From positions 62,001 through 126,000 of the IMG/VR virus record IMGVR_UViG_3300043446_004437: DNA of 64,000 bases, one strand, 5' to 3'. The notes below the pieces were generated by a model. That model worked only from the letters and a program-made list of their open reading frames with translations, was not told the DNA's origin and searched no databases. The number at the start of each line of letters is the position of its first letter. Within the stretch, counting starts at the first letter, position 1. Positions 4,342-39,727 of this stretch are shown piece after piece. The position numbers and the translations under genes are program-made.

Positions 4342-4352
4342 ACCAAGTTTAG

Positions 4353-5076: not shown

Positions 5077-5077
5077 A

Positions 5078-5455: not shown

Positions 5456-5468
5456 AAGGAGTCACACA

Positions 5469-5636: not shown

Positions 5637-5677
5637 CCATTATGACTATCTCCTATAACACCATCATACCAACTTTA

Positions 5678-5708
<31 letters not shown>

Positions 5709-5873
5709 CGAAGCGAGCCCCCCTACCCCCTAGTAGACTTCCGTAAGGAAGCTTCTAAAAAAATTCGAGTAGTCCTCAGGACGCCGAGAAAAAAAGAAGT
5801 ACAAATGTTGCAAGCGAGTACACGAGTCTGCTATACTGATATCCTAGGAAATAAACACATAAGGAGATTATGT

Positions 5874-6089
5874 ATGCCTCGGCAGCATCAATCTAAAGCA
5901 GTCCGGAAAGTTCTCGCAGAACTAACCAGACTAGGCTTTAACGTTGAACAAAAAAAATCAGGTGTCTATCGGATCACTCCACCTCCAGGTGTAGACGGTC
6001 CAATGTATACGACACATGGCACGGAATCAGCATTGCACCCAATGCGCCGTGACTTTAAAAAATATTATAACATAGATATCAACGTTTAA
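5874..6089 (+). CDS. HicA-like small protein
   Basis: helix-LGF.V..KKSG.Y.I pattern resembling the HicA dsRBD-like fold; AAGGAG RBS. Confidence 0.45.
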   Translation: MPRQHQSKAVRKVLAELTRLGFNVEQKKSGVYRITPPPGVDGPMYTTHGTESALHPMRRDFKKYYNIDINV

Positions 6090-7075: not shown

Positions 7076-7148
7076 GCCCTGATAGCTCAGAGGACAGAGC
7101 AACGGACTTCTAATCCGCAGGTCGTAGGTTCGACTCCTACTCAGGGCG
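7076..7148 (+). tRNA. trnR: tRNA-Arg(TCT)
   Basis: GCCCTGA/TCAGGGC acceptor, loop CTTCTAA, GGTTCGACTCC T-arm. Confidence 0.95.
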
Positions 7149-7211
7149 CTCAAATAAAAACAAAACAGTGACCAACCCAGCAATAAAAATAAACTTAATC
7201 GAGGTATAGAC

Positions 7212-16018: not shown

Positions 16019-16105
16019 GCCCAGGTGGCGGAATTGGTAGACGCAAGGGGCTTAAACCCCCTCGCTATGTGAAATAGCGTACGGGTTCGATTCCCGTCTT
16101 GGGCA
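16019..16105 (+). tRNA. trnL: tRNA-Leu(TAA)
   Basis: GCCCAGG/CTTGGGC acceptor, AGGGG-CTTAAAC-CCCCT arm, long variable arm. Confidence 0.95.
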
Positions 16106-16122
16106 CAATACAAAGGATTTTT

Positions 16123-18837: not shown

Positions 18838-18910
18838 TGGCGAGTAGCTCAGTTGGCAGAGCAAGGGACTGTTAATCCCTGGGTCGCAGGTTCGAGCCCT
18901 GCCTCGCCAG
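18838..18910 (+). tRNA. trnN: tRNA-Asn(GTT)
   Basis: TGGCGAG/CTCGCCA acceptor, loop CTGTTAA. Confidence 0.95.
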
Positions 18911-19079
18911 CTATGAAAAATTTTATTTATACTTCAATATTGTTTCCAGGTTCTTTTGAACCTGATCTACGCCCTATGATTATTCTTGTAGTTATTATGA
19001 TATCTTCCATATATTATGTTATTAAAAAAAATTGGAATGATATTAAAGACGATTTTAATTCCGATTGGGAATGATTTAA

Positions 19080-19152
19080 GCGCCTTTAGCTCAGCCGGTA
19101 GAGCACCGGACTTTTAATCCGTTGGTCCTGGGTTCGACCCCCAGAGGGCGCA
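19080..19152 (+). tRNA. trnK: tRNA-Lys(TTT)
   Basis: GCGCCTT/AGGGCGC acceptor, loop CTTTTAA. Confidence 0.95.
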
Positions 19153-19219
19153 CTGGATATAAGAAATAAAAACATACAGTGATATGTATTTCTAGTCCAA
19201 TTTTTAACAAAGGAAAAAA

Positions 19220-21998: not shown

Positions 21999-22071
21999 GG
22001 GCCGTTAGCTCAGCGGTTAGAGCAGGGCACTCATAATGCCTTGGCCGTAGGTTCGATCCCTACACGGCCCA
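21999..22071 (+). tRNA. tRNA-Ile2 or Met (CAT)
   Basis: GGGCCGT/ACGGCCC acceptor, loop CTCATAA; identity ambiguous. Confidence 0.9.
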
Positions 22072-22073
22072 CT

Positions 22074-23539: not shown

Positions 23540-23611
23540 GCCCAGTTAGCACAGTGGTAGTGCATCCGCCTTGTAAGCGGAAGGTCCTCAGTTCAATCCT
23601 GAGACTGGGCT
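23540..23611 (+). tRNA. trnT: tRNA-Thr(TGT)
   Basis: GCCCAGT/ACTGGGC acceptor, loop CTTGTAA. Confidence 0.95.
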
Positions 23612-23613
23612 CT

Positions 23614-23954: not shown

Positions 23955-24281
23955 ATGTTCATTCAACGCAAGCCTTGGATGCAGGAAGCATCATGTGTTG
24001 AGCAAAGTTTAGATATATTTTTCCCCAACAGATATACAGAAAACACCGTTTCTAAACCATTTTCTGTATGTGAACAGTGTTCTGTTAGATGCGAATGTTT
24101 ATACGAAGCTATGACAACTGAATCTGTTGGCATATGGGCGAAAACAACAGACTATCAAAGATCAGTTATCATGTCTAGATTTTTTAATGATAACCCAAAA
24201 AATATTAACATTGACACAATATTCCAGATCGTTGAAAACAATAATTATTCTATACCAATTTCATTAAAATACGATCAATAA
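23955..24281 (+). CDS. whiB: WhiB-family protein #3
   Basis: WMQEASC...FFP...C..C.V..EC and GIWA. Confidence 0.9.
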   Translation: MFIQRKPWMQEASCVEQSLDIFFPNRYTENTVSKPFSVCEQCSVRCECLYEAMTTESVGIWAKTTDYQRSVIMSRFFNDNPKNINIDTIFQIVENNNYSIPISLKYDQ

Positions 24282-24327
24282 TAAAAATTCTAAAAAAGGC
24301 CCTATCATAACATAGAGTAGGTTGATT

Positions 24328-25083
24328 ATGACAAACGAAGCTTTTAATAACGACGACGATCTGTTTTCTTATGATCCAGACCAAACCAAACACATTCAAT
24401 CAAACGATTTTTATTCTAGCGCCTCAGACAACACCACATCTGGAGTATTTGATGATATATCTAAACGGATTGATGACACAAAAGATGACGATATTTTAGG
24501 ATCGTTTAGTTTAAAGATTAGATTTGCAGAATCTTTACTCGATACTTATAATAAATTTGTTCGTCCATCAAATGTCTTTTTCCACAAAGCTGTACATCAA
24601 ACATTAGACCAATTAACTAACGGTCGTTTTTCTATGTTTTATATGTATAATTTTTTGGAACAAAATATTATACGTAGACTTAATGTAAGTTATTTGTTTG
24701 AGAACGCTTTTCTCCAAAAAACAGAAGATGGCAGTTTAGAGATTTCTTCTGAATTCAAACAGTTTTTAGATCAAATAAAAATGGATTCAGACAACAATTT
24801 TGTTAATTGTTACATAAAAACTAATTTGCATATAAACAATCATGTTTTAAACAATGAACGTTCTATGTACGCTCAAATTGCAGAAAAATTAGATCTGCCA
24901 ATGCACCCAGTTATTGCAGATCCAAATCCACCCTTACAAGACTTGATACATACTCTTGCCACCAGCGTTAGTGACTACCATGACACAATGTACAAATCTA
25001 TGTTTGAATCATTGTCTGACGCACAATATACAGAAAAACTTTCTGAACTTTATTCCAATCCTGTTAGGATTACAAAAATATGA
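24328..25083 (+). CDS. acidic hypothetical protein
   Basis: About 250-aa ORF. Confidence 0.75.
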   Translation: MTNEAFNNDDDLFSYDPDQTKHIQSNDFYSSASDNTTSGVFDDISKRIDDTKDDDILGSFSLKIRFAESLLDTYNKFVRPSNVFFHKAVHQTLDQLTNGRFSMFYMYNFLEQNIIRRLNVSYLFENAFLQKTEDGSLEISSEFKQFLDQIKMDSDNNFVNCYIKTNLHINNHVLNNERSMYAQIAEKLDLPMHPVIADPNPPLQDLIHTLATSVSDYHDTMYKSMFESLSDAQYTEKLSELYSNPVRITKI

Positions 25084-25538
25084 TAGGTAAAAAATTTAAA
25101 AAAGTTACTGTGTCAGTTTTTTCTGCAGCTGCTGTTGCTGCGATAAACTACACTATATTCCATAGCAGTTTTGTGTTTATTATACTTGCAGTTTTAATAT
25201 CTCATGAACTTGGTCACTATATAACTGCAAGAATAAACAACGCTGATGCAGACTTGCCATACTTTGTGCCAATACCAATAGTATCTATTGGTGTTACCCG
25301 AATACGCAACATGAAACATTTGCCTTCACACATTGCAAAAAAAATTGTTGCATACGGTCCTATAACAGGATTCATAGCAGCTTTCTATCTTTTATTATTA
25401 TCTTTTATTTATACCTCACTACCAACTCTACCTTTACTTCTTGTTTGCGCATCTGAAATTATATTTAATTATTTTGGTTTTGATGGTACAAAATATCGTC
25501 AAATAAAAGAACAGGATACAGCTTTATGTACATTATAA
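25080..25538 (+). CDS. M50-like intramembrane zinc metalloprotease
   Basis: HELGH within a TM segment, AYGP motif, terminal FDG. Confidence 0.7.
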   Translation: MIGKKFKKVTVSVFSAAAVAAINYTIFHSSFVFIILAVLISHELGHYITARINNADADLPYFVPIPIVSIGVTRIRNMKHLPSHIAKKIVAYGPITGFIAAFYLLLLSFIYTSLPTLPLLLVCASEIIFNYFGFDGTKYRQIKEQDTALCTL

Positions 25539-26302
25539 TTGCACCTTTTGTATTTTTAGGTTTAGCTGCAAAGCTAATCAACAACAAAATAAATAAACAA
25601 AAACAAAATAATGAACTTTCGTTATTCAATAATATAATTTCCACATACACAAACAAAGTAGAGAAAGAGACAGATACTAGTGACACCGACAGAAAAAGAA
25701 TACGAAGATTCAATAAAACTAACATCTGAATCAATTAAATCATACTTAGATGATTGTTGTTTAGATGTTCAATTTAGCCCAAACGGAACATTATCTGCAA
25801 CCGAAACATATCTTATAAAATTAATTTCTAAAATTGCTATAGGTTCAGCTACCGTTTGGTGGTCACTTATTGAATTGAAACAATTCATAAAAAATCGTAA
25901 ATCCATTTAGGAGAAACAATGAGCTCAGAAGATTACAAAAAATTAGATAAAATAAAAAAGTTTAACTTTTCTTTTGACATGGCATCTAAAACTAAGTCTG
26001 AGCTTCAACAACAACGCGATACAGTAAAGGAAAGAATAGATAAGATCGTCAATCATTTTACAATCGATGACGTTCCTATTCTTTCCTACATACTGCATGT
26101 AACATCTTCTCGCGTAGAATTAAAAAAGCTTGCTAAAGCTATTGATAGGTTAGCTGATCTTGTAGAAATAAATACTTCTTTAAATAATAAACTTAAAGTT
26201 ATTGAAGCTGCGGAAACAGATCCAAATTGGTTTGCTCTTGCATTTGGTGATTTTGATCAAGAAATAGATTCAGATTTAGAAAAATTTTTTACCCAAGAAT
26301 AG
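25526..26302 (+). CDS. three small ORFs (25526-25729, 25680-25910, 25919-26302)
   Basis: ORF track, operon packing. Confidence 0.6.
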
Positions 26303-26320
26303 TTGAAGAAAGAGATTATC

Positions 26321-27973
26321 ATGGATAAAGTTTCATATTCTTTTGTTAAAGATCAAGACAATATTATCTTTAGATCAAAAGTAAAGTCATTTAATTTAGA
26401 CCATGTTACAGATAAAGATATTGCTTCGTTTTACACCGCATTTTCTGACTATTCTTATTTTGATACTGGTCTTTTGCCTTTAGATGGCACCGGTCTTTTA
26501 GGTGTACGCAAAGCCGGCAACCACACTCAAGTCATATATCAGTACAAACCAGGCATGTATTATGTTAACTGGGGTGCTTACGAGAAAGACTCAAATTACA
26601 CAAAATACTATTTTGCTCAACCATACAGAATTGTTATCATAGATTTTCTTGATAACAATCTTTTAGGTGCAAGAACATTTTATGCTGTCGAGCCAGCAAT
26701 ACATTCAAATGTTCAGCTGTATCATGTTAATCTACCAAACATCAATTGCCAAGGGTACCGCGGAAATGCTGTTGGTTGGATATGTTTATATCACAATGAA
26801 GATTGGTCTAAGTTACCTTTTAACGAAAGACTCAATAGAGCATTAGAGCGTTGTTCTGGCGTAGAAGTTTACAATGACGCCAACATGAGCGAAACAGATG
26901 GTCCTCGTTTTTATGAACAATCTGAAATGCCTGATTACACTTATAGCCCAACTTTATGGGAGAACAAATCAGCAGAAGAGGGTTGGGAATGGACATTAGA
27001 TCCATCTCATTGGATACCTGTTAAAGTAAGATCAATTGATTCCCAAACCGATCATTATGCAAACGGCATTCCTCTTACCCTTCTTACGGCAATAACTGGC
27101 AATTACAAAGCGTACTACACTGACACTTATTTGCCAAAACCAATTAACGCTATTACCAGACCTGATTTACAATTACCTAATTCTCAAGTTGTAAACTGGT
27201 TTGTGCAGTCTTACAATACTTCTTCAACAACATTTTCTGGTCTTGATCCTTATTCTCAAAGCCAAGCTCATAGAGAACATGCTGCAACTATACAGCAAAC
27301 TTTATTTGATAACGATGATGAAGAAGAAGACGAAGATTCAGAAAATGAATCAGATGAATTATACTGCCCAGTTGTTCATGAATTTGTTTCTTCTGATTCT
27401 TGTGGCGATAAAAGTTCAACCTATCAAGATGAAGAAGGAAACTGTTACGAAGTTTGTCAATCTTGCGTTTATCACAACGATTTGATTTATGCAAAAAATA
27501 CTATGAAGCTACATAGCTCTTCGGAAAATTTGCATTATCAAGAATGTGAAGAAGAATATTATTATCTTCCAGCTATTAATTCTCCGTACAAAATTTGTCC
27601 AAATTGTGACACTTTACACATATCATTGCTTAAAGATGCTGCAATATTTCCTATTTGGAAATACACCAACCAACCAGGCGATCATGCTTGCTCAACTTGT
27701 ATAGCATCTCATCCAGACAAATATACACAATGTTCAGAATGTTCAACTGATGTTCCTCACAATACTTCTAAATTCTTTAATGATACTTTACATTATGATG
27801 AAGATTATGAAAAAGTTACTTGCGAATCTTGTTTGAAATTAGCTGATAACACTATTCAAACAGAGTTTACTCAAAAAAATTTAGTTCCTCCTTCTGAATT
27901 AATTATAACGGCTATACAAGATTTAGTGAATAAAATTAATTCTACTCCAAACACTGCTGAAGAACCATTTTAA
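26321..27973 (+). CDS. prokaryotic E2 family D-like protein with acidic linker and Cys-rich C-terminus
   Basis: QPY.IV...LYHVNLPN.....G.ICL pattern as in PRTRC protein B / Prok-E2_D. Confidence 0.6.
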   Translation: MDKVSYSFVKDQDNIIFRSKVKSFNLDHVTDKDIASFYTAFSDYSYFDTGLLPLDGTGLLGVRKAGNHTQVIYQYKPGMYYVNWGAYEKDSNYTKYYFAQPYRIVIIDFLDNNLLGARTFYAVEPAIHSNVQLYHVNLPNINCQGYRGNAVGWICLYHNEDWSKLPFNERLNRALERCSGVEVYNDANMSETDGPRFYEQSEMPDYTYSPTLWENKSAEEGWEWTLDPSHWIPVKVRSIDSQTDHYANGIPLTLLTAITGNYKAYYTDTYLPKPINAITRPDLQLPNSQVVNWFVQSYNTSSTTFSGLDPYSQSQAHREHAATIQQTLFDNDDEEEDEDSENESDELYCPVVHEFVSSDSCGDKSSTYQDEEGNCYEVCQSCVYHNDLIYAKNTMKLHSSSENLHYQECEEEYYYLPAINSPYKICPNCDTLHISLLKDAAIFPIWKYTNQPGDHACSTCIASHPDKYTQCSECSTDVPHNTSKFFNDTLHYDEDYEKVTCESCLKLADNTIQTEFTQKNLVPPSELIITAIQDLVNKINSTPNTAEEPF

Positions 27974-28013
27974 TTAAAAATAACGGAATATTATTTTATT
28001 TAGGAGACCACCT

Positions 28014-29744
28014 ATGCAAGAAGAAGAAGTGCAGCCTCAAGTAACCCTTGATCAGCTTCAATATTTTTGGATGCCGTCAGGCGTTCCATGTTTTATTGCT
28101 GACAGGGATACAATTTGTGATATTGTTGAAGACATTGGCTTTAACATATATTATCTTTTGGCCAACAAAAAGACAGTGAAAACAATTCAGCAGCCTGCAA
28201 ATAACAACAAAGTTGGTTACACCACCACAACCCAGCCTGTGCAGGTTGCTACTTACAATTCTTCATTATTTAAGGTTGTGAATAATTTTGTTGGTAGGGT
28301 AATTAAACCATCTGATGATGAATTGCCAGCAGAGTTTTATGTTGCAGAAGAGTGTTGTGAATACAACATGCCTGAATTGCCTTACGTTCTTGTTGAAAAG
28401 ATGGATCAATTCTTTAGACTTGTTTATTCTCAGCACGGCACGGAGTCAATTGTTCTTCTTACTTACGATACAGAAAAACAGGGATCTGATGGTTGGGGTG
28501 TTTTAGTTCCTGATCAGGTAAATACTCCTGCTCACTGCAAATACGATGCGGACAGCATCGCTGCAATCAAACCAGAAAATGTTATGATTGTTGGTTCTGT
28601 TCATAGTCATCCAGAAATGTCTGCGTATGCTTCTGGTACCGACCACGCAGATCAAGCAGATTTTGATGGTCTTCACATCACCTATGGTTGGCAGAAGAGC
28701 GTCAACAATGGCGCCACTCAGTACCACATAGAACTTCAGATGTCTGGATCTTCTTATACCTTGAAACCTGAAGATGTTTTTGAGAATTTTTATATTCAAA
28801 AAGAACCTGATTCTGAAGTTGTAGAATGGTCTACTAAAGTAAAAAAAGCACACCCCCCTATAGCGGGGGGAGTCAGCACGTCGGCACCAGCGCAGGTTCC
28901 AGCGCCGTACAACCAGTCTCATCGGGCTCAACAACCGTATCAAAACTCGACGCAACATACGGCGGCTGGGGAGCCTACGATTGGTAAAAGACTTTTAACC
29001 AAACACTGGAACGACATGGTTGCCGATCTTGGTGACAATGCCATTGTTATTGTTGAAGCAGACCCCCAAATAGCTTATGCTTCAATATGTCCTGCTTGCG
29101 ATTACGATCTTGATACTCAAGATTTTAGAGCAGGATATTGTGCTTGTTGCGATGTTCCAGTTGTGTTAAACAGTCATAGTATTTTTCAAATAGCTTCGAT
29201 ATACAACAGATATTGTCTTGAGAGATCTTTAGATCCAACTCAAATGGTTCCATATTTGTATGGTGAAAACGAAAAGTTTGAACACTTTTTGATGAAACTA
29301 AATATTGAACAAGAAATACACGATATACACAAATATAATTATGGCATAGATGACGATGAAGATGTTCCATTAAGTTTAATAGAATCTTCTGATAATTATG
29401 ATTATTATCACAGTCTAAACGATAATGATTATGATGGAACAAAAACCATATGTTGCAATACACCTATGGAAAATTACATTAATAACTGTAATTGTCTTGT
29501 TCCAATTCTTTATGAAGATTTAAGTGCATTTGAATCGGCAGTTGAAACTATTGAGCTTTATGACACTAATTCTTCTTGTATATATTGCGCTCATTATTAT
29601 ACTCCTGCATGTCCTGCATATCGTTATTTATTAACTCAATATGTTACAAATAAATACGGTTTTGATCTTGAAACCCAAAGAAACGGCATAATACCGTGCA
29701 CTCATTATGAGTCAATGTATGCAGATACATTAGAAAAGGAATAA
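28014..29744 (+). CDS. JAB/MPN+ metallo-isopeptidase with Cys-rich C-terminal extension
   Basis: TESIVLL Glu and HSHPEMSAYASGTD (HxH-x7-S-x2-D). Confidence 0.9.
   Translation: MQEEEVQPQVTLDQLQYFWMPSGVPCFIADRDTICDIVEDIGFNIYYLLANKKTVKTIQQPANNNKVGYTTTTQPVQVATYNSSLFKVVNNFVGRVIKPSDDELPAEFYVAEECCEYNMPELPYVLVEKMDQFFRLVYSQHGTESIVLLTYDTEKQGSDGWGVLVPDQVNTPAHCKYDADSIAAIKPENVMIVGSVHSHPEMSAYASGTDHADQADFDGLHITYGWQKSVNNGATQYHIELQMSGSSYTLKPEDVFENFYIQKEPDSEVVEWSTKVKKAHPPIAGGVSTSAPAQVPAPYNQSHRAQQPYQNSTQHTAAGEPTIGKRLLTKHWNDMVADLGDNAIVIVEADPQIAYASICPACDYDLDTQDFRAGYCACCDVPVVLNSHSIFQIASIYNRYCLERSLDPTQMVPYLYGENEKFEHFLMKLNIEQEIHDIHKYNYGIDDDEDVPLSLIESSDNYDYYHSLNDNDYDGTKTICCNTPMENYINNCNCLVPILYEDLSAFESAVETIELYDTNSSCIYCAHYYTPACPAYRYLLTQYVTNKYGFDLETQRNGIIPCTHYESMYADTLEKE
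28841..28870 (+). promoter_or_regulatory. putative -1 programmed ribosomal frameshift signal
   Basis: A AAA AAA heptamer in frame, 5-nt spacer, CCCCCC-TATAGC-GGGGGG hairpin. Confidence 0.75.
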
Positions 29745-29746
29745 TT

Positions 29747-30505
29747 ATGAACCCTAAACGTTTTGTTGTTATAGGAGCTGGTGGCGTAGGCACATGGCTT
29801 ATTTCAGGTTTAGTAAGATTGCTTGAATGGAAAGCTCCAGGTTCAGGTTTGATAATTGTTGACGGCGACAATTATGAACAAAAGAACAAAGAGCGTCAAG
29901 AGTTTACAAAAATTGGCAATAAAGCTGTTGTTAAAGCTCATGAACTTACACCTAGTTTTCCAAAAACAACTATTATTCCTGTACCCAAATGGGTTGTAGG
30001 AGACGACTTTAAAGGAGTTACGACAGATGAAGATTCTCCAAAAATTAAAGCATCAGCTTTATTATCTGAAGGAGATGTGGTCTTTGCGGTTGTCGATAAT
30101 TTTGCTGCGCGCAAGATTATTTTTGATGCGGCGTCGCGGTTAGACAACATTGATGTATTTACTGGTGGCAACGACGATGCTTTATTTGGTTCAATATATC
30201 ATTATCAAAAAAGAGATGGCGTTGCTATAACAGAACATCCAGCAGTGTTTCACCCCGAATATGATAACGCACCAGACAAAAATCCTGGTGAATTATCATG
30301 TCAAGAAAGATCTGAAATAGAAGGTGGAACACAGTTACTTGCCACTAATATGGCAGTTGCTGCATTTATTCTTGGTAGAGTACAAAAGACAATTGTGCTA
30401 GACCAAAGCCCCGAAGAAACAGAGATATATTTTGATTTAGGTATCGGTAAATCCGAACCATATAACAGAATGGTATCTTATGTTTCAGAACCTGTTCAAG
30501 TATAA
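29747..30505 (+). CDS. ThiF/E1-like activating enzyme
   Basis: IGAGGVG, VDGD..E.KN..RQ, NKA, VDNFAAR, candidate catalytic Cys in ELSCQER. Confidence 0.92.
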   Translation: MNPKRFVVIGAGGVGTWLISGLVRLLEWKAPGSGLIIVDGDNYEQKNKERQEFTKIGNKAVVKAHELTPSFPKTTIIPVPKWVVGDDFKGVTTDEDSPKIKASALLSEGDVVFAVVDNFAARKIIFDAASRLDNIDVFTGGNDDALFGSIYHYQKRDGVAITEHPAVFHPEYDNAPDKNPGELSCQERSEIEGGTQLLATNMAVAAFILGRVQKTIVLDQSPEETEIYFDLGIGKSEPYNRMVSYVSEPVQV

Positions 30506-30523
30506 ATAAAATAAGGAGCAATC

Positions 30524-30775
30524 ATGGAAAACAATATGTCAAACGCTTCCGCATCTCAGCCAACTGGTATGGCAAATTTGAGGTTTGGTGTTTACAACCA
30601 GCCTACAAATGTTGCTGGAAAATCTGTTCAGCAAGCGCGCGAACAGTTTTCTAAAATTTGGGGTATCCCAAATGACGCAGTTGCTTACAAGGGCAAGGAC
30701 AAGCTCGACGAGAATTACGTTATTCAGCCAGGTGACAACGTAGAATTCCACCGTCGTGCCGGCGAGAAGGGCTGA
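30524..30775 (+). CDS. ubiquitin-like (beta-grasp) protein ending RRAGEKG
   Basis: 83 aa, C-terminal Gly, VIQPGDNVEF strand, directly after E1, strong RBS and C-ending codons. Confidence 0.8.
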   Translation: MENNMSNASASQPTGMANLRFGVYNQPTNVAGKSVQQAREQFSKIWGIPNDAVAYKGKDKLDENYVIQPGDNVEFHRRAGEKG

Positions 30776-30794
30776 TTAATTCAGTCATAAGATC

Positions 30795-30840
30795 GTGGGA
30801 AGGCTCTAATTTCCGCTAATAGAGCCTTCCCACATTTTTT
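30795..30840 (+). terminator. Rho-independent terminator
   Basis: 14-bp stem gtgggaaggctcta/tagagccttcccac followed by a T-run. Confidence 0.85.
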
Positions 30841-30874
30841 TTAAAAGGCGTAAGTCTATCTATCAGGGGAAAAA

Positions 30875-32479
30875 ATGTTATTTGATGAAATAAAACTTGG
30901 TTATCCATCTTTATGGCTTAAAACCACAGAATATTCAAGAGCCGCAGAAAGTTTAGTTTCTTATGATTTTAGAGACTTTTATACAATAAATTTTGAGTCT
31001 GGCTTTTCTCAGTATGTTGGTGGTGCATGGAAAACAATTCTTATAGAATCTATAAATCCAGAAAATGGAGAAACAATCCATCAATCTACATTTGATCCTT
31101 CTGTATCGTTAAATTATTTACTTAATCTTAAATCAGATAAGCCAGTTACTTATTTGCTACCAATTTTAGGCAAACCTGATTCTGTTCTTCTTCCATACAT
31201 TTCTTTTGTTGCTGCTTTAAATGATAATTACAGAAAGAACTTTTGGCTTGATAATATTGAAGCAACATCGCTTCAAGTAGTATTTATATCTTCTGCCGAT
31301 GCTCCAGAAGAATATTTGCATATGTTTAAAACTGTTCAGTTTTCTTATCCTAATTCAGAAGAACTTTTTACAGTAGTTAATCATATCGATACTTCTTCTG
31401 CTGGAAGATTTGTTGATCAAAATGAAATCAAAGATATTGTTCGTTCTGGCTTAGGTCTTACAGAAGATCGTTTTGTTGATCTTTGTTTACGTTCTATTGT
31501 CAACAACAATAAGATTGATAGCAAATATGTTTATGATCAAAAGATGGCTCATATTAAAGAAGCTGGTATTTTGGAGATTATTAAACCTAAAATATCTTTT
31601 GATAATATTGGTGGCTTAGATAATATTAAAGATATTATTCAAAGAACAAAACTATTGTGGGCTAACCGGGAACAAGCAAAATCTTTTGGCGTTGTTCCGA
31701 TTAGAAGAGTTCTTATGGTGGGCGTTCCCGGCACCGGCAAGTCTGCTATTTGTCAAGCAACTGCGAAAGAACTTGGCCTTGACTTGGCCCGTACTGGCAT
31801 TAGCCAAGTTATGAACTCTTTTGTCGGCAAATCAGAAGCAAACATGAGAGCTGTTTTTGATCAGATTAAAATGATGACTCCGCTTTGTGTTTGGATCGAC
31901 GAGTTTGGTCGCGATCTTTCAGGTGGCTCTAGCAGTTCTCATGTTGACGCAGGCACTACTGATCGTGTTCACGGTGAATTTTTGACAGGATTGCAGGAAC
32001 TTCCAGAAGATACTTTCCTTATGTGTGCCGCAAACCAGCTAGATAATCTTCGTCCAGAAATGCTTCGTGCAGATCGTTTCGACAAGATAGTCTTTGTTGG
32101 TTTGCCTTCACATCAAGAAAGAAAAGATATCTTTAAAATTATTCTTAAAGATATTGAAACTGATCACATCTTTGATTACGATGCACTTGCGGAAAAAGCA
32201 CAGTACTTTACTGGCGCAGAAATTACCGCACTAATCAAAGAAGTTAAATTCTTTGTTGTTTCTTCACAACTTCGACCAATCAATACTCAAGATATTATAT
32301 CTTATATTCCTACTGTAAGAAATATTCTCTGGAACAAAAACAGAGATATGATTAAAAACATGTATCAGTATGCTCTTGAACAATGGGATTGGGCTTCTAC
32401 TGAACAGCTACAAGATGCTAAAATGATTATACACGGTACGAGAAGCAACTCTGATAAAGACTTAGCTTGGAAAATATAA
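30875..32479 (+). CDS. classical-clade AAA+ ATPase (Ycf46-like, degenerate N-terminal module)
   Basis: GVPGTGKS, WIDE, AANQLDNLRPEMLRADRFD second region of homology. Confidence 0.92.
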   Translation: MLFDEIKLGYPSLWLKTTEYSRAAESLVSYDFRDFYTINFESGFSQYVGGAWKTILIESINPENGETIHQSTFDPSVSLNYLLNLKSDKPVTYLLPILGKPDSVLLPYISFVAALNDNYRKNFWLDNIEATSLQVVFISSADAPEEYLHMFKTVQFSYPNSEELFTVVNHIDTSSAGRFVDQNEIKDIVRSGLGLTEDRFVDLCLRSIVNNNKIDSKYVYDQKMAHIKEAGILEIIKPKISFDNIGGLDNIKDIIQRTKLLWANREQAKSFGVVPIRRVLMVGVPGTGKSAICQATAKELGLDLARTGISQVMNSFVGKSEANMRAVFDQIKMMTPLCVWIDEFGRDLSGGSSSSHVDAGTTDRVHGEFLTGLQELPEDTFLMCAANQLDNLRPEMLRADRFDKIVFVGLPSHQERKDIFKIILKDIETDHIFDYDALAEKAQYFTGAEITALIKEVKFFVVSSQLRPINTQDIISYIPTVRNILWNKNRDMIKNMYQYALEQWDWASTEQLQDAKMIIHGTRSNSDKDLAWKI

Positions 32480-32487
32480 GGATAAAT

Positions 32488-35266
32488 ATGTCAGATCAAA
32501 TTGATTTTTCTAACATTGAAGAAGTATTAGAAAGCATACAAGTAGATAAAGATGTTCCCAACAACCATTCTTTATCTGCAAATAAACAGTATGATCAGGA
32601 CCTTTATAAAAAATGGTTTCGTTCTAAAACACAAAGCGGATTTCTTTCTATCAAACCATGGTATCAAGGTTTGAAATTTAAGATTGATATTGGTAAAACA
32701 TCTCCAGATGGAAAGCTTTTAGGAAGCACTATGGTGTTTGTCGACGCCATAGATTTTGCAGCATATTTAGATTCTGTTGTTAACGGTACAGCAAAACTTA
32801 ATTTTCCCGCCAATGAAAAAAATGGTAGCGTTACAGATGAATCTTTTGTTTCCTATGGCGGTGGCATCATAGAATCAAAACCAATATCAAGAATATTTAA
32901 ATCTCACTATTGGCAGAACTCTGACAAATCTTATGATTCTAATGCATTCGTTTGGAAATGCGGACATTTTGCTGCACGTAAAACAGAAAGCGGAGCTTTT
33001 ATTCCAAACATGTCTTCACCTGTATCTGTAGACTCAATTAAAGTTACAAGACAGGATCTTGTAAGCATTTCTTATATGCTAAAATTGTCACTAACATCTC
33101 ACGTGACAAACAATCCTGATTGGTATAACATATAATTATGACTGATAACTACACTGAAGCTAACATTGAAATAATGACTAAGATTCTTTCTTCTTTAGTT
33201 GAAGAAGTATATCAAAAAATATTAACTGATATCGAGTCTCAGTTTAAAGATATACTTGCAAAATTAGAAAAATATGAAGATCAAGTTGCGACAATAGTGT
33301 ATGCTTATGGAGAGCAAGCTATAGTTATGGAAGCGTTAACTTCCCAACTTGAGTATGCTACTCCAGAAGCTCAAAAAGCTTTTACTGATAGTTTATCAGA
33401 GCAACGAAAGAAAATGATACAGGTTCTCAATGAAAGCTCTAAAGGATTTATGGCCGACAACGATCCAGGAATTGCAAGAGCCCTTGGCAACCTGGTTGAA
33501 AAAAAGTTATCTGACACAAATTAATAACAATGAATGCGTGTTATTTGTAGATAAACATAATTATTTACTTTTACAAAATATTGTTTATCTTTCACAGATA
33601 TATCCTCTTGTTAAATCATTATGTCCTGAATTTAAATCTTTACATTTATTAGAAACAAATCTTTTAACTTATTTAAGACAATCAAAAATAGAATTGTATT
33701 CTGTAGAGGTAGTATAATGCTTATAACTAATTTTAATGATATTTCTTCTTTTAACCATTTTTGGAATGATGGCATTGATAGACTGCACAACTGCAGGCCA
33801 CTTACAGAAGAACTGTATGTTTTATTATCTTTTAATCGGTTAGATATAGTCAAAGCTCATGTAGAGTCCGGAGCATCAGTATCTAACTATGTTGAACAAA
33901 TTCAACAAAATCTTCCTGAACAATATCAAACTATCGTTTCGGAATACCATACAAAATTTAAATCCGAACACACTGCGTACGTTTATCCTTACAGTTCAAC
34001 AAAATTCTTTAACAGTATGTTTAAAGAAATTTTACCCTCCGCTGCAAAAAAACTTTACTCATTAATTTTTAATGATTCTTCTTTTATACAAATGTATGAT
34101 TCAACTGCAACATCTTTCAAAGGATGTATCTTATTTAAGATTGTTCCTACTTTAAAGAACTTAAAAGAAATAAATAATATAGTTTTTAACACAGTTTCAT
34201 CTGATTCTGTCGCAGTTCTTCAAGATGTATTATCTCATATACAGCTAATAGTAGAAGACAATGAAGCTTACAAAAATTATATCTTAGAACTTGAATCTGC
34301 TGTAATTAATCTAAACAGTAAAATAGATCTTCTTCAAAAAGAAGGCATGAACGGTTATCTTCTTAGCTGGCATTAATGTGAAAAGGAAATATATATATGT
34401 ATAAAATAAAAACTTCATTAAGCGGCTCATCATATGCTGCTATCCCTGTTGATTCAGTCAACAGTATGAATTTATTTGTAAATCAATACAGTAAAATTCC
34501 TTTAAATAAAGTTGTTTACGATTACTTTAATACAGGTCAAGTATATGTAAACTTCCCATCTAGCTCAGGTAAGATTCTTGGTTTTTCTGATACTATGTGC
34601 ACCATACTCGTCAGGTATGTTGTCAAGCCTTCTTTCTTTAACCAGTTTGATGATAATCATACTTTTGAAGTTCCTAGTTGGGCTACTAGGTTCGTTGATG
34701 ATCAGTTAAATGGCTGGATGCTTGATATTGGTTTAGTCTTTGAAATTGACAGTTCACCTGCTGCAAATCCAATCTGTAAACATTATACTGGTTACACTTC
34801 TGAAAACAATTATGTAACTTCTAAAAATTATTTGTTTGCCAACAAACCTAATTCTATTAGATCTAATTGTTCAAATTCAAAAGTTTATGTGAATAAACTT
34901 ACTCCACATTCATGCATATACAGTGATACAAAAACTCCTTTTGTTAGCTGTCCTTTTTATGAATATGATTATGAAGTAGTTGAAAGTTTTCAAATACACA
35001 AAAACACGCATTCTCCACAAGAATTTGAACTAAGATATATTCCTTGTTCAGATAGCTTTGCAATATATCATTTTTATGATATTACAAATAAACAAATTAA
35101 TTATTCTATCTTTGAAAAAGATACACCAGAATTAAAAGATACTGTTATGTTGGCTGTAAATGAAATCATTTCATCTTACTCTAACTATGAAGTTAAACAA
35201 ATTCAAAATCAAGGCGTTTCTGTCAGTGCGCCAGAAAAGAAAAGCTACATACTTTCTTTAGTCTGA
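32488..35266 (+). CDS. five hypothetical ORFs (32488-33135, 33138-33524, about 33538-33717, 33717-34376, 34397-35266)
   Basis: Contiguous ORFs without recognisable motifs. Confidence 0.7.
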
Positions 35267-38550: not shown

Positions 38551-38978
38551 TAGACCCACGCAATTTACTCAATCTTACTGGCGGAGTTGTAACCGACGTA
38601 GAGTTGATAAATGATAAAATAGCAAAGTTTCGTTTAGCTGTTGATTACGCAGGATCAGAAAAAGGTTCTGATAATACATCTGGTTATTTTGATGTTGTGT
38701 ATTATCTTAAGGATTCTAACGGTTTTATCGGAAAGAATGCTACATTTATTCATGGTCAGATTAAAAATGACAAGATTAAAAAGGGCGCAAAACTTCAGAT
38801 CGTTGGTCGCTTGGTTCAGGAAAGATGGAAGCAAGATGATCAAAATAAAAATCGCGTTGTTGTAGTTGCTGAGCACATTTCTTATGCAGCAACTGCTGGA
38901 GCCCAAGGAACTAAAACATCTTCCGCTGGAACATCATCTGACACAGAGACGCAGAGTTCTGTTCCAGATAGTTTCTAA
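38547..38978 (+). CDS. ssb: single-stranded DNA-binding protein
   Basis: OB-fold pattern FRLAV...KGAKLQIVGRL.QERW; DSF tail. Confidence 0.92.
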   Translation: MIDPRNLLNLTGGVVTDVELINDKIAKFRLAVDYAGSEKGSDNTSGYFDVVYYLKDSNGFIGKNATFIHGQIKNDKIKKGAKLQIVGRLVQERWKQDDQNKNRVVVVAEHISYAATAGAQGTKTSSAGTSSDTETQSSVPDSF

Positions 38979-39727
38979 TGGAAGAATTTAGCGAAGAGTT
39001 ATTAAACTCTTTAATAGAAGAAGCTTTGAATGAAAAGGGGGAGAGCTTATTAAGACCGGCTTCTAGTATGTATCTTTCATATAATGAAACAGATTTATTG
39101 TCTCTTGTTTATAACTATATGTCTAAACACTTACCAGAATCTGAGCTTAATAATGTTTTTCAAGAGTTTCGTTCAGAGCTTCTTTCTAGGAAAGTTCCTA
39201 TTACTCCAAAAGAACTACACACGGTTACAAAAAACTGTAGAAAATGCGGCATATCTGCAACCGCAGAACTTCCTAAGTGGAATGTAATAGATCCTGATGT
39301 AGTTATTGTTGTTGAATCTCCTTCAATAGAACCAGAAGCCATAAATCTTATGATAGATTCTATAAAAGAATCTAAGTTTAAATCATCAGATTTATGTTTG
39401 ACTTATGTTAATAGATGTCCTAAATACGGTAAATATGATAACAAAGAAATAATTAATTGTTCACCATATTTGCATACAGAAATACAAAGTTTAAATCCTA
39501 AACTTATTGTAACTATGGGAGCTTTAGCAGCTTCTGTTTTATTTGGAACAGATATTAAACTAAAAGATTACCGAGGCAATGTTACTTGGCTTGGCTATTG
39601 GCCTATATTGCCAACATATTCTCCAGGATATGTTTTAAAATCTGGTGCTAATTCTATTGAGCAGTTTAAATCTGATATTGTTCAAGCTTATCAGTTTGTA
39701 CATAAACCTAAAAAGGAAGTTGTGTAA
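38978..39727 (+). CDS. udg: uracil-DNA glycosylase family 4
   Basis: CRKC, VESP, TYVNRCP, CSPYL..EI, TYSP motifs. Confidence 0.88.
   Translation: MEEFSEELLNSLIEEALNEKGESLLRPASSMYLSYNETDLLSLVYNYMSKHLPESELNNVFQEFRSELLSRKVPITPKELHTVTKNCRKCGISATAELPKWNVIDPDVVIVVESPSIEPEAINLMIDSIKESKFKSSDLCLTYVNRCPKYGKYDNKEIINCSPYLHTEIQSLNPKLIVTMGALAASVLFGTDIKLKDYRGNVTWLGYWPILPTYSPGYVLKSGANSIEQFKSDIVQAYQFVHKPKKEVV

What the first reader, a model, noticed from the sequence alone, without database searches (positions are those of the whole stretch)
26321..32479. Phage-encoded ubiquitin-like conjugation cassette: E2-like, JAB, E1, Ubl, AAA+
Seen: five consecutive genes, namely a Prok-E2_D-like protein with a candidate Cys (GWICL), a JAB isopeptidase, a ThiF/E1 with ELSC, an 83-aa beta-grasp protein ending GEKG, and a classical AAA+ ATPase. 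Established: E1-E2-Ubl-JAB operons exist in bacteria (PRTRC-type cassettes; Bil anti-phage systems that conjugate Ubl to virion proteins). The Ubl already ends in Gly, so the JAB need not mature it and may act as a deconjugase. Inference: the phage runs its own protein-tagging pathway, for example to remodel host proteins, counter host Ubl or Pup systems, or feed an unfoldase.
Basis: partly seen in the sequence, partly recalled or inferred. Interest (0 to 1): 0.82.

Follow-up and report, generated by a model that had tools for sequence, protein, structure and literature searches.

The report
Jumbo phage ubiquitin-like tagging cassette
An uncultured phage of about 216 kb, and every known relative of it, carries genes for a small ubiquitin-like protein and for enzymes that could activate, attach and remove it; the set is a distant cousin of the unstudied bacterial "PRTRC / E2 family D" cassettes, so these viruses probably tag proteins much as eukaryotic cells do, but what they tag is unknown.

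Summary
Five real, conserved + strand genes lie at 26321-32479.

- **E2-like protein:** invariant Cys155 in GWxCxY. Pfam does not recognise it, but profile-profile comparison links it to Prok-E2_D (96.5 %, Cys aligned).
- **JAB protease:** intact JAMM motif.
- **E1:** a 252-aa ThiF-type enzyme with all adenylation motifs and an invariant E-x-S-C cysteine.
- **Ubl:** an 83-aa protein with a predicted ubiquitin fold. Every homologue ends exactly at ...AGEKG.
- **AAA+:** Cdc48-D2-like, with an intact pore loop.

The block is collinear in all 53 related viral contigs (150-268 kb). It is absent from isolate bacterial genomes and from cultured phages. Cultured Bacillus jumbo phages carry a distant E2_D-JAB-ThiF trio in the same order.

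Corrections to the finding:
- The conserved module has eight genes; p127, p222 and p128 also belong.
- A conserved terminator hairpin separates the Ubl gene from the AAA+ gene. AAA+ homologues occur in other phages that have no annotated E1, E2 or Ubl nearby (two checked). The "feeds an unfoldase" idea therefore rests on synteny alone.
- A UBC fold could not be shown against solved structures.
- PRTRC, Bil and CBASS membership tests fail.

Best reading: a divergent, lineage-core, phage-encoded Ubl conjugation system of the 6d/PRTRC kind, with unknown targets.

The parts
25919..26302 (+). p127, a small conserved protein directly upstream of the E2-like gene; function unknown
   Evidence: Present at the same place in every related locus with sequence there, 29-89 % identity. 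No Pfam or PHROG hit.
26321..27973 (+). E2-like protein (550 aa from ATG 26321). Conserved N-domain residues 1-~330, with the Prok-E2_D-like core at ~26-210. Candidate catalytic Cys155 in GWICLY (nt 26774-26791), preceded by HVNLPNINC (26723-26749). Acidic linker 27308-27358. Cys-rich region with five CxxC (27455-27832). C-terminal EEPF tail (27959-27970).
   Evidence: conservation; C155 invariant. (AF2 pLDDT 86.8). (hhalign to Prok-E2_D 94.9 then 96.5 %). (Atlas: Prok-E2_D / PRTRC_B 0.93-0.94). (BFVD hit E 3e-10). (tail and motif coordinates).
28014..29744 (+). JAB/JAMM metalloprotease (576 aa). N-terminal alpha+beta region, JAMM core with E144 (28437-28454) and HSHPEMSAYASGTD (28602-28643), a low-complexity linker and a Cys-rich C-terminal region.
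   Evidence: Prok-JAB, PRTRC_A. (motif invariant, also in Bacillus phage and Cytobacillus plasmid homologues).
29747..30505 (+). ThiF-type E1 (252 aa). GAGGVG 29774-29791, DGD..E.KN.ERQ 29861-29899, VVDNFAARK 30089-30115, ELSC with Cys185 30290-30301.
   Evidence: With the Ubl, the most conserved gene of the block (70-90 % identity, 50-55 % in the four most distant loci).
30524..30775 (+). Ubiquitin-like protein (83 aa). Disordered variable N-terminus, beta-grasp core 17-76, invariant tail HRRAGEKG ending at Gly83 (30749-30772). A strong AAGGAG Shine-Dalgarno sequence lies upstream.
30796..30841 (+). Intrinsic-terminator-like hairpin (14-bp G+C-rich stem, 11-nt loop, then A + T8) directly after the Ubl stop codon.
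   Evidence: dG -27.1 kcal/mol, z -6.3, 0 of 200 shuffles as good. (a strong hairpin at the same place in most of 38 distinct relatives, with different stem sequences; 23 with a T5+ run).
30875..32479 (+). AAA+ ATPase (534 aa). Poorly conserved N-domain 1-~230, then one classical AAA module: Walker A 31721-31744, pore loop SFVG 31817-31828, Walker B 31889-31906, sensor-1 32027-32038, Arg fingers 32063-32083.
   Evidence: (phrog_8638 E 2.5e-70). Link to the Ubl genes is by synteny only.
32467..33135 (+). p222, a highly conserved protein that overlaps the AAA+ stop by 13 nt. Weak lead to a Whirly/PUR-like ssDNA-binding fold.
   Evidence: 55-89 % identity in most loci, 29-52 % in the four most distant. 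(Atlas leads only: Whirly 0.84 by features; PurA TM 0.49 for the model of the nearest cluster, not of p222 itself). (no PDB or Pfam hit).
33138..33524 (+). p128, a small conserved protein 2 nt after p222; function unknown.

Best explanation
The four genes E2-like / JAB / E1 / Ubl form one transcription unit that encodes a phage-run ubiquitin-like protein conjugation system. It belongs to the Prok-E2_D ('6d', PRTRC-like) kind and is fixed as a core module in a lineage of uncultured phages of roughly 150-270 kb.

Proposed steps (all inferred; none shown biochemically):
1. The 252-aa ThiF-type E1 adenylates the free C-terminal Gly83 of the 83-aa Ubl, which needs no processing.
2. The E1 takes the Ubl onto Cys185, in the invariant E-x-S-C loop.
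3. The Ubl passes to Cys155 of the E2-like protein (GWxCxY, downstream of an H-x-N-x-P-N stretch that recalls the HPN motif of E2s).
4. From there it goes to lysines of target proteins.
5. The conserved second domain of the E2 protein (residues ~185-330), its variable Zn-ribbon region and its acidic ...EEPF tail are the likely means of finding targets or partners.
6. The JAMM protease reverses or edits the conjugates.

The neighbouring AAA+/p222/p128 unit and p127 always travel with these genes and may act on the same substrates, but that is not established.

The position among early or replication-type genes (WhiB-like, helicase, UDG) argues for a role in infection physiology rather than as an accessory cargo gene. 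So does the fact that E1 and Ubl are the best conserved genes of the region.
For: - Catalytic equipment is complete and invariant in all four proteins.
- The Ubl has a ubiquitin-type predicted fold. In every homologue it ends at Gly after an invariant tail.
- The E2-like core is homologous to Prok-E2_D with the Cys in register (controls 112, 113). This is supported by language-model features and by a structural match to a 241-aa viral protein.
- The reference protein passes Pfam PF14460.
- The same gene order E2_D-JAB-ThiF occurs in Bacillus jumbo phages and a Cytobacillus plasmid.
- The block is present and collinear in all 53 viral loci. E1 is 70-90 % and Ubl 64-94 % identical in most of them (50-55 % and 42-74 % in the four most distant), against 21-67 % for the flanking genes outside the two nearest relatives.
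- Genes are tightly spaced (40, 2 and 18 nt) and a conserved terminator hairpin follows the Ubl gene.
- E1/E2/JAB/Ubl operons of this architecture were predicted to conjugate Ubls (Iyer et al. 2006, PMC1779556, row 6d). Related bacterial systems (CBASS Cap2/Cap3, Bil, Bub) are reported to conjugate proteins (PMC11601596 and PMC11601603).
Against: - No biochemical data exist for any Prok-E2_D/PRTRC system; its function 'has not been studied' (PMC13366799).
- The confident AF2 model of the E2-like domain found no UBC or any other solved fold. HMMER never links the family to Prok-E2_D.
- The Ubl ends in K-G, not G-G, and has no Pfam match.
- Its fold matches are at E about 1e-3 on a model with pLDDT 77.
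- No target, E3 or acceptor is identifiable.
- Synteny within one collinear lineage cannot separate functional linkage from shared descent.
Confidence: 0.65

Rival explanations
1. Extended version. All five genes (or all eight) form one pathway in which the Cdc48-like AAA+ recognises Ubl-tagged proteins through its own N-domain and unfolds or extracts them. This would be a phage analogue of ubiquitin-p97 or Pup-Mpa.
For: - The AAA+ gene follows the Ubl gene in every related locus that reaches that far.
- It is closest to the Cdc48/p97/VAT D2 domain.
- It has an aromatic-hydrophobic-Gly pore loop and all ATPase motifs.
- It carries a lineage-specific N-domain.
Against: - A conserved terminator hairpin separates it from the Ubl gene.
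- In the most divergent relatives, three extra genes lie between Ubl and AAA+.
- Homologues at 28-32 % identity (phrog_8638) occur in Mycobacterium, Agrobacterium, Rhizobium and Pseudomonas phages. In the two neighbourhoods inspected, nothing annotated as E1, E2 or Ubl lies within 4 kb, and the gene after the ATPase is unrelated to p222.
- No protease partner is identified.
- The whole region is collinear, so adjacency carries little weight.
Confidence: 0.3
2. Sulfur-carrier system. The Ubl is thiocarboxylated by the ThiF-type enzyme and donates sulfur to a cofactor, a tRNA or a DNA base modification, as ThiS/ThiF, MoaD/MoeB, CysO/Mec or QbsE do. No proteins are conjugated.
For: - The E1 is a minimal ThiF-size enzyme whose nearest solved relatives include ThiF, MoeB, Uba4 and TcdA.
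- Atlas features place the Ubl near ThiS-family clusters.
- JAB proteins accompany sulfur carriers in CysO/Mec-type systems (Iyer 2006).
Against: - An E2-like protein with an invariant Cys is always present, and sulfur-carrier systems lack one.
- The 252-aa E1 has no rhodanese domain or CxxC zinc motifs.
- No ThiG, MoaE, CysM-type acceptor or cysteine desulfurase appeared among the neighbours scanned.
- The Ubl ends in K-G, not the G-G of ThiS/MoaD/Urm1/SAMPs (comparison from general knowledge).
- The Ubl needs no JAB trimming.
Confidence: 0.1
3. Accessory cargo. The cassette is a Bil/CBASS-like anti-phage (superinfection-exclusion) system, or a PRTRC-like plasmid or element maintenance module, carried by the phage rather than used for its own infection cycle.
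For: - Characterised bacterial E1/E2/JAB systems are reported to act in anti-phage defence.
- PRTRC cassettes sit on plasmids, ICEs and some temperate phages and have been guessed to act in partitioning.
- The weak best NCBIfam hits are PRTRC_A and PRTRC_ThiF.
Against: - No PADLOC defence model matches beyond marginal E1 hits.
- No ParB or other PRTRC proteins are found, and the scores are far below the PRTRC cut-offs.
- The cassette is universal, collinear and among the best conserved genes of the lineage, unlike variable cargo islands.
- The family is essentially absent from bacterial genomes: 3 short MAG contigs of discordant taxonomy among 185,579 species.
- No CD-NTase or other effector gene was seen nearby.
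Confidence: 0.1
4. Virion-assembly role. The Ubl and JAB act in morphogenesis, as the ubiquitin-like gpI/TAPI and JAB-containing gpK do in lambda-like tails, or they cross-link structural proteins.
For: Iyer et al. 2006 describe Ubl + JAB pairs in phage tail-assembly operons. Bil systems are said to conjugate their Ubl to virion proteins (as stated in the finding; not re-checked in the papers read here).
Against: - The lambda-type pairs lack E1 and E2.
- The cassette lies among WhiB-like, helicase, protease, UDG and tRNA genes, not recognisable structural genes.
- No structural PHROG is nearby.
Confidence: 0.07

Closest known systems
Prok-E2_D / JAB / ThiF / Ubl operons ('6d' of Iyer, Burroughs & Aravind 2006; Pfam PF14460), as found in Bacillus jumbo phages vB_BceM_WH1 (gp214-216), vB_BauM_KLEB27-3 (gp196-194) and Edson, and in Cytobacillus plasmid NZ_CP065512
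   Same: - Same three enzyme families in the same order, E2_D-JAB-ThiF.
- The E2 cores align with the Cys in register.
- JAMM and E1 motifs, including E-x-S-C, are shared and invariant.
- The JAB has an extra N-terminal region, as described for 6d.
- Found on large phages or phage-like replicons.
- A possible shared Ubl tail, AG[ET]KG, is a weak lead.
   Different: - Only 14-17 % identity in the E2 core; invisible to HMMER and Pfam.
- The E2 protein here is 2-3 times longer, with a conserved second domain, Zn ribbons and an acidic-PF tail.
- The JAB carries a long Cys-rich C-terminus.
- The Ubl gene follows the E1 gene and ends exactly at Gly, whereas the candidate in the Cytobacillus plasmid is upstream and would need cleavage.
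- AAA+, p222, p127 and p128 accompany it. The Bacillus cassettes instead have a 509-559-aa protein upstream.
PRTRC cassette (ParB-related, ThiF-related; NCBIfam TIGR03735-03742) of plasmids, ICEs and some temperate phages
   Same: The best NCBIfam hits of the JAB and the E1 are PRTRC_A and PRTRC_ThiF. Atlas features put the E2 core next to 'PRTRC system protein B' clusters. The function of PRTRC is also unknown.
   Different: Scores are far below the cut-offs (20 vs 102 bits; 27 vs 145 bits). No ParB and no PRTRC C/E/F proteins were found in the ORFs scanned. The cassette here is a fixed core module of phages that show no sign of living as prophages, not mobile-element cargo.
Bil (BilABCD) and type II CBASS (Cap2/Cap3) bacterial anti-phage conjugation systems; Bub operons
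   Same: They use E1 + E2 + JAB (or another peptidase) + Ubl (or a Ubl-like C-terminus) logic in prokaryotes, and protein conjugation has been shown experimentally for them.
   Different: - They are host defence systems, whereas this one is in the virus.
- No PADLOC model matches, apart from marginal E1-E2 hits to the ThiF part at E 7e-4.
- The E2 family differs (Prok-E2_D rather than the Bil/Cap2 types).
- There is no CD-NTase.
- Bub uses oxyester intermediates and lacks the catalytic cysteines; the cysteines here are invariant.
Eukaryotic ubiquitin-Cdc48/p97, archaeal SAMP/UbaA/JAMM and actinobacterial Pup-Mpa tagging-plus-unfoldase systems
   Same: A small tag with a free C-terminal Gly, an E1-type activator, a JAMM deconjugase and a Cdc48-D2-like AAA+ with a translocating pore loop are encoded side by side.
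   Different: The unfoldase has a single AAA module and an unrelated N-domain. No protease partner is identified. Coupling between tag and unfoldase is not shown, and a terminator lies between the genes.
ThiS/ThiF, MoaD/MoeB and CysO/Mec sulfur-carrier pairs
   Same: A minimal ThiF-size E1 and a ThiS-like small beta-grasp protein ending in Gly.
   Different: An E2-like Cys protein is present. The terminus is K-G, not G-G. No rhodanese domain and no acceptor enzymes were found nearby.

Membership tests
Generic E1-E2-Ubl-JAB conjugation cassette (Iyer 2006 type 6d) | E1 with nucleotide-binding GxGxxG, Arg/Asp adenylation motifs and a conserved catalytic Cys | tested here: met
   Pfam ThiF 43.5 bits, above the 28.1 cut-off. 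G10/G12/G13/G15, D41, N47, R50, Q51, D117, N118, R122 and C185 are invariant in 28 sequences, including Bacillus phage and plasmid relatives.
Generic E1-E2-Ubl-JAB conjugation cassette (Iyer 2006 type 6d) | E2-like protein with an invariant Cys, homologous to a recognised prokaryotic E2 family | tested here: met
   C155 is invariant in 56 divergent sequences. hhalign to Prok-E2_D proteins gives 96.5 %, E 7.8e-10, Cys aligned. The reference passes PF14460 at 46.3 bits. Controls score below 1 %.
Generic E1-E2-Ubl-JAB conjugation cassette (Iyer 2006 type 6d) | E2 domain adopts the UBC fold | tested here: inconclusive
   The AF2 model (pLDDT 86.8) has the order helix, beta-meander, Cys loop, helix. 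Foldseek against the PDB gives no match with E < 0.1. No Prok-E2_D structure is in the PDB by sequence.
Generic E1-E2-Ubl-JAB conjugation cassette (Iyer 2006 type 6d) | Small beta-grasp protein with an exposed C-terminal Gly | tested here: met
   AF2 gives bb-a-bb-b order and a flexible tail. Almost all of the 50 listed Foldseek matches are Ub, NEDD8, SUMO or other Ubl domains, prob 1.0. All 30 aligned homologues end ...GEKG.
Generic E1-E2-Ubl-JAB conjugation cassette (Iyer 2006 type 6d) | JAB protein with an intact JAMM motif E...HxHx7Sx2D | tested here: met
   E144, H197, H199, S207 and D210 are invariant. Pfam Prok-JAB scores 24.1 bits, just under the 25 cut-off.
Generic E1-E2-Ubl-JAB conjugation cassette (Iyer 2006 type 6d) | Thioester relay and isopeptide conjugates are actually formed | not testable with these tools
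   Needs biochemistry or mass spectrometry.
Pfam Prok-E2_D (PF14460) | Match to the family HMM at the gathering score | tested here: not met
   No hit at E <= 1 for the window protein, 49 close homologues or 54 distant ones. The relationship is seen only profile-to-profile.
PRTRC system (NCBIfam TIGR03735-03742) | ThiF and protein A reach the curated cut-offs | tested here: not met
   PRTRC_ThiF 27.2 bits vs 144.75; PRTRC_A 20.4 bits vs 101.8.
PRTRC system (NCBIfam TIGR03735-03742) | ParB-related protein and PRTRC proteins B, C, E, F in the cassette | tested here: not met
   No such NCBIfam hit for the six proteins E2 to p222. No ParB Pfam hit in the nine ORFs 24322-33135. The small ORF 25680-25910 and p128 were not scanned.
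Bil / type II CBASS defence systems | Match to PADLOC models of BilABCD or Cap2/Cap3; a CD-NTase present | tested here: not met
   PADLOC gives only marginal 'E1-E2' hits to residues 3-84 of the ThiF protein (E 7e-4 to 0.04), and nothing for E2, JAB or Ubl.
Classical-clade AAA+ unfoldase (Cdc48/PAN/FtsH type) | Walker A/B, pore-loop-1 aromatic-hydrophobic-Gly, sensor-1, second region of homology with Arg fingers, AAA lid | tested here: met
   Pfam AAA 83 bits; AAA_lid_3 26.1 bits, just under its 27.2 cut-off. Cdc48 D2 E 1e-53. GVPGTGKS, VWIDEF, SFVG, AANQ and LRADRFD are present and largely conserved.
Sulfur-carrier Ubl systems (ThiS/MoaD/CysO) | Gly-Gly terminus, rhodanese or desulfurase partner, acceptor synthase nearby, no E2 | tested here: not met
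   The terminus is Lys-Gly. The E1 is a single ThiF domain. No such partners appeared among the neighbours scanned. An E2-like protein is always present.

The most novel reading that the evidence does not exclude
A lineage of bacterial viruses depends on its own ubiquitin-like conjugation pathway. The E2-like enzyme is steered by Zn ribbons and by an SSB-tip-like acidic ...EEPF tail, which it shares with two other phage proteins. It tags host or phage proteins (perhaps at the replisome), a JAMM enzyme edits the tags, and the adjacent Cdc48-like AAA+ (with p222) extracts or unfolds the tagged proteins. This would be a complete viral counterpart of the eukaryotic ubiquitin-p97 axis working inside bacteria.
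Probability: 0.15. Interest if true: 0.9.

Novelty: new variant of a known kind. Interest (0 to 1): 0.62.

Why it matters
Ubiquitin-like conjugation in prokaryotes has so far been demonstrated only in host anti-phage systems (CBASS, Bil, Bub). The Prok-E2_D/PRTRC branch has never been studied biochemically.

Here that branch appears as a strictly conserved core module of a whole lineage of large phages, and its E1 and Ubl are the best conserved genes of the region. That points to a viral use of protein tagging during infection, the mirror image of Bil.

It also offers a compact set of proteins for testing how the most divergent E2 family works: a 252-aa E1, an 83-aa Ubl that needs no processing, and one E2. 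If the neighbouring Cdc48-like ATPase proves to be coupled, the system would be a minimal tag-and-unfold machine.

Tried and rejected
- **HMM scans of the E2-like protein.** Pfam, PHROG, NCBIfam and PADLOC scans of the protein, 49 close homologues and 54 distant ones found nothing relevant.
- **Profile searches of the PDB.** Searches with the E2 family and with Prok-E2_D gave only chance hits.
- **Foldseek of the 340-residue E2 model against the PDB.** No hit. This does not refute a UBC fold, because the model holds extra domains and no Prok-E2_D structure exists.
- **Bridging to Prok-E2_D by HMMER.** An exhaustive profile search gave 206 hits, but only the best 150 are listed and all are family members. 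A word-indexed search with a 56-sequence core profile gave 20 hits, all family fragments. Neither gave a bridge, so I obtained Prok-E2_D sequences through the ThiF neighbour instead.
- **Single-sequence hhalign against Bacillus phage gp214.** Not significant (E 0.25). It became significant only with alignments on both sides.
- **DNA and protein searches of cultured phages for the cassette or the E2.** None found.
- **p222.** Nothing in the PDB or Pfam. It is not related to the genes that follow the AAA+ homologues in phages JP1 and Catdawg.
- **The two Cys-rich C-terminal regions (E2 and JAB).** They are not similar to each other beyond CxxC.
- **The 346-aa protein with the PF tail.** No PDB or phage hit.
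- **Host assignment.** 'Flavobacterium sp.' and other MAG labels are discordant and sit on short or phage-like contigs, so I rejected them as evidence of the host.

Full report
**1. What is in the sequence**

Between 25.9 and 33.5 kb the + strand carries a tight row of ORFs.

| Gene | Coordinates | Length |
|---|---|---|
| p127 | 25919-26302 | 127 aa |
| E2-like | 26321-27973 | 550 aa |
| JAB | 28014-29744 | 576 aa |
| E1 | 29747-30505 | 252 aa |
| Ubl | 30524-30775 | 83 aa |
| AAA+ | 30875-32479 | 534 aa |
| p222 | 32467-33135 | 222 aa |
| p128 | 33138-33524 | 128 aa |

For the E2-like gene the mechanical ORF starts at TTG 26303, but homologues begin at the ATG 26321. The spacers are 40, 2, 18 and 99 nt, then an overlap of 13 nt and a gap of 2 nt. 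None of these genes has an in-frame stop.

**2. Origin**

- The window is positions 62001-126000 of a 216,024-bp IMG/VR viral contig.
- It has 7 tRNA genes and a phrog_16 helicase. It also has a subtilase, a UDG-family protein, glycosyl- and methyltransferases, and many ORFs with no match.
- No cultured phage matches the region at DNA level, or the E2 at protein level.
- Relatives of the E2-like protein form a large family: 168 clusters at 90 % identity and 206 representatives at 50 % identity. They come from metagenomic contigs of up to 268 kb.
- In 185,579 species genomes the family occurs only on three short MAG contigs of discordant taxonomy.
- This is therefore a lineage of uncultured large phages, with no sign of prophage life. 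The host is unknown.

**3. The four enzymatic or tag proteins**

*E1.*
- Pfam ThiF is above threshold.
- In an alignment with 24 relatives plus the ThiF proteins of a Bacillus jumbo phage and two plasmids, three features are invariant: the GxGGxG loop, the D/N/R/Q and D-N...R adenylation residues, and Cys185 within E-x-S-C.
- A profile search of the PDB finds ThiF-type proteins, TcdA, UBA5, Uba4, MccB and the eukaryotic E1s.

*JAB.*
- Prok-JAB E 3.5e-5 and PRTRC_A E 3e-4.
- The motif E144...H197-x-H199-x7-S207-x2-D210 is invariant.
- An N-terminal region of about 140 residues precedes the core. This matches the extra N-terminal domain described for JABs of the '6d' operons (PMC1779556).
- A Cys-rich region of about 250 residues follows.

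*Ubl.*
- Sequence models find nothing. Even so, the family is among the most conserved in the region: 66-87 % identity in the alignment and 42-94 % across all related loci.
- Every aligned member stops after the invariant EFHRR[AS]GEKG.
- AF2 gives a beta-grasp order with a floppy tail.
- Almost all of the 50 Foldseek PDB matches listed are ubiquitin, NEDD8, SUMO, ISG15, the parkin Ubl or similar, at prob 1.00 and TM 0.53-0.66 by the query.
- Language-model features point to ThiS-family clusters.

*E2-like.*
- HMMER-based tools find nothing.
- The N-terminal ~330 residues are 45-89 % identical across the sampled close relatives. They contain the stretch LYHxNLPNxNCxGY...VGWxCLY.
- In members down to 28 % identity, Cys155 stays invariant while Cys143 does not.
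- Atlas features place residues 30-205 next to Prok-E2_D / 'PRTRC system protein B' clusters at 0.93-0.94. I treated this only as a lead.
- To test it I reached bona fide Prok-E2_D proteins through the E1. tblastn of the E1 found ThiF genes in Bacillus jumbo phages and a Cytobacillus plasmid.
- In that plasmid the gene two upstream of the ThiF gene, with the JAB gene between them, is annotated 'prokaryotic E2 ligase family D' and passes PF14460 at 46.3 bits.
- Profile-profile comparison of 56 divergent core sequences with three, then six, of these proteins gave 94.9 % and then 96.5 % probability. The second run had E 7.8e-10 over 147 columns. The DTGLLP/ETPLLP, AQPYRI/IPVPP, LYHxNLPN/LHAPFPN and GWICLY/GICWG motifs are in register.
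- Unrelated alignments score below 1 %.
- Independently, Foldseek of the AF2 model (pLDDT 86.8) against viral models hits a 241-aa protein at E 3e-10. That is the length of gp214 of Bacillus phage vB_BceM_WH1, but the library gave no name, so I could not verify its identity.
- Against solved structures the model finds nothing. The secondary-structure order (helix, beta-meander, Cys-bearing loop, helix) is compatible with a UBC domain, but the fold is not demonstrated.

**4. The AAA+**

It has a single classical AAA module, closest to the D2 domain of Cdc48/p97/VAT (E 1e-53). Walker A/B, an F-V-G pore loop, sensor-1 and the Arg fingers are present and largely conserved. It also has a poorly conserved N-domain of 230 residues.

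It belongs to phrog_8638, of unknown function. Relatives at 28-32 % identity occur in Mycobacterium (Catdawg-like), Agrobacterium, Rhizobium and Pseudomonas phages. In the two neighbourhoods inspected there is no annotated E1, E2, Ubl or p222-like gene.

**5. Extent and organisation of the module**

- In 53 IMG/VR loci plus two others, the row p127-E2-JAB-E1-Ubl-AAA-p222-p128 is present and collinear wherever the contig reaches.
- In most loci identities to the window are 70-90 % for E1, 64-94 % for Ubl, 55-89 % for p222 and 52-81 % for AAA+. In the four most distant loci they fall to 50-55, 42-74, 29-52 and 39-41 %.
- E2 (full length) is 36-63 % identical and JAB 37-60 %. The flanking genes are lower or undetectable.
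- In the most divergent relatives the JAB C-terminal part is a separate ORF and three extra genes sit between Ubl and AAA+.
- Directly after the Ubl stop codon lies a 14-bp G+C-rich hairpin followed by T8 (dG -27 kcal/mol, z -6.3).
- Most of the 38 distinct relatives have a strong hairpin at the same place with different stem sequences. Twenty-three of them have a T-run.
- With the strong AAGGAG before the Ubl start, this suggests two units. E2-JAB-E1-Ubl is one transcription unit ending in a terminator or 3' stabiliser. AAA-p222-p128 is a second, possibly read-through, unit.
- The region as a whole is collinear in the lineage. Conserved adjacency is therefore weak evidence of functional coupling.

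**6. Mechanism**

The best-supported reading is a thioester relay: E1 Cys185 to E2 Cys155 to target lysines, using a Ubl that is made ready to use, with the JAMM enzyme as deconjugase. Every step is inferred from conserved catalytic residues, fold predictions and analogy with characterised E1/E2 systems. Nothing is shown biochemically, and no Prok-E2_D or PRTRC system has been studied.

Targets are unknown. Candidate targeting devices are the conserved second domain of the E2 protein, its variable Zn-ribbon region (five CxxC), the Cys-rich tail of the JAB, and an acidic C-terminal tail.

**7. A side observation that may bear on targeting**

- E2-like proteins of the close family end in an acidic run plus Pro-Phe (EEPF, DEPF, SPF), whether or not they carry Zn ribbons. 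Of 256 family proteins, 91 end in PF.
- Two other proteins of this phage end the same way: a 177-aa protein ending at window 441 (...TEEDPF) and the 346-aa ORF 3301-4341 (...TAVDPF). Their orthologues keep the tail while the preceding residues vary.
- From general knowledge, this resembles the acidic ...D-I-P-F tip by which bacterial SSB docks its partners, and the acidic Phe-ending tail of T7 gp2.5.
- A common receptor for the three tails is a testable idea, not a result.
- p222 has weak Atlas leads to Whirly/PUR-type ssDNA-binding folds. Nothing confirms them.

**8. Comparison with known systems**

The closest are the Prok-E2_D/JAB/ThiF/Ubl operons ('6d'), including unannotated copies in cultured Bacillus jumbo phages, and the PRTRC cassettes.
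- Membership of PRTRC fails: scores are far below the cut-offs, and there is no ParB or C/E/F protein.
- Membership of Pfam Prok-E2_D fails at the HMM level but holds as remote homology.
- Bil and CBASS models do not match.
- The sulfur-carrier reading is disfavoured by the ever-present E2-like Cys protein, the K-G terminus and the lack of partner enzymes.

**9. Verdict**

This is a new, strongly diverged variant of a known but uncharacterised kind of system. It is notable for being a fixed core module of a phage lineage and for its accessory parts. The unfoldase link and every proposed biological role remain open.

Noticed in passing
window 30796-30841; the same position in L001-L061: A strong hairpin + T-run directly after the Ubl stop codon. 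It is conserved in most relatives with different stem sequences, and looks like an intrinsic terminator or mRNA 3' stabiliser splitting the 'cassette' into two units. The built-in terminator scan missed it because the loop is 11 nt.
   Followed up: yes
window 27959-27970 (E2 tail), 4327-4338 (346-aa ORF 3301-4341), 427-438 (ORF ending at 441; full length 177 aa in L062:1108-1641): Three different proteins of this phage end in [AE][EV][DEV]-P-F after a variable linker, and orthologues keep the tail. It resembles the acidic tip of bacterial SSB (from memory). It may be a shared docking motif.
   Followed up: partly
window 32467-33135 (p222), 25919-26302 (p127), 33138-33524 (p128): Three further genes are as strictly syntenic as the five reported. 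p222 is 55-89 % identical in most of the lineage and overlaps the AAA+ stop. There are weak Atlas leads to Whirly/PUR-like ssDNA-binding folds, and no Pfam or PDB hit.
   Followed up: partly
window 23955-24281 and 25080-25538: A WhiB-like Cys protein lies a few genes upstream of the cassette (its counterparts in relatives carry Pfam Whib), together with a small membrane protein with a Peptidase_M50 match (E 1.4e-7). Both are conserved in many relatives. WhiB is typical of actinobacterial phages, which hints at the host, but the G+C content is only ~35 %.
   Followed up: partly
window 1-6000: G+C is 0.44-0.49 here against ~0.33 for the rest of the window. The stretch holds the two other PF-tailed proteins, and none has a database match.
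   Followed up: partly
window 7076-7149, 16019-16106, 18838-18911, 19080-19153, 21999-22072, 23540-23612, 43772-43847: Seven tRNA genes (Arg-tct, Leu-taa, Asn-gtt, Lys-ttt, Met-cat, Thr-tgt, Gly-tcc) are scattered among the + strand genes.
   Followed up: no
window 49364-53287 and 55404-59174 (- strand); 9924-12557 (+ strand): Very large ORFs (1307, 1256 and 877 aa) with essentially no Pfam or PHROG match. Nearby are a subtilase (16099-17568), a helicase (13600-15279), a UDG-family protein (38978-39727), and glycosyl- and methyltransferases (60388-63722).
   Followed up: no
L005 (LC597490.1 gp213-216), L069 (OM634661.1 gp197-194), L070 (PV796108.1), L007 (NZ_CP065512.1): Cultured Bacillus jumbo phages and a 240-kb Cytobacillus 'plasmid' carry [509-559-aa protein]-E2_D-JAB-ThiF in the same order. 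In the phage records the E2_D gene is annotated only as hypothetical.
   Followed up: partly
L007:1556-1894: A 113-aa protein upstream of the Cytobacillus cassette (weak Prok_Ub hit) contains ...ITFSPKAGTKG at residues 47-57. This resembles the window Ubl's C-terminal ...VEFHRRAGEKG (hhalign E 0.01 only). If real, that Ubl would need cleavage after KG, unlike the one here.
   Followed up: partly
L054, L056, L057, L060: In the most divergent relatives the JAB gene is shorter (409-423 aa); in L057 it is followed by a separate 190-aa ORF. In L057 three extra ORFs (347, 112 and 175 aa) lie between the Ubl and AAA+ genes; the other three loci also have a 0.9-2.3-kb gap there. Their functions were not examined.
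   Followed up: no
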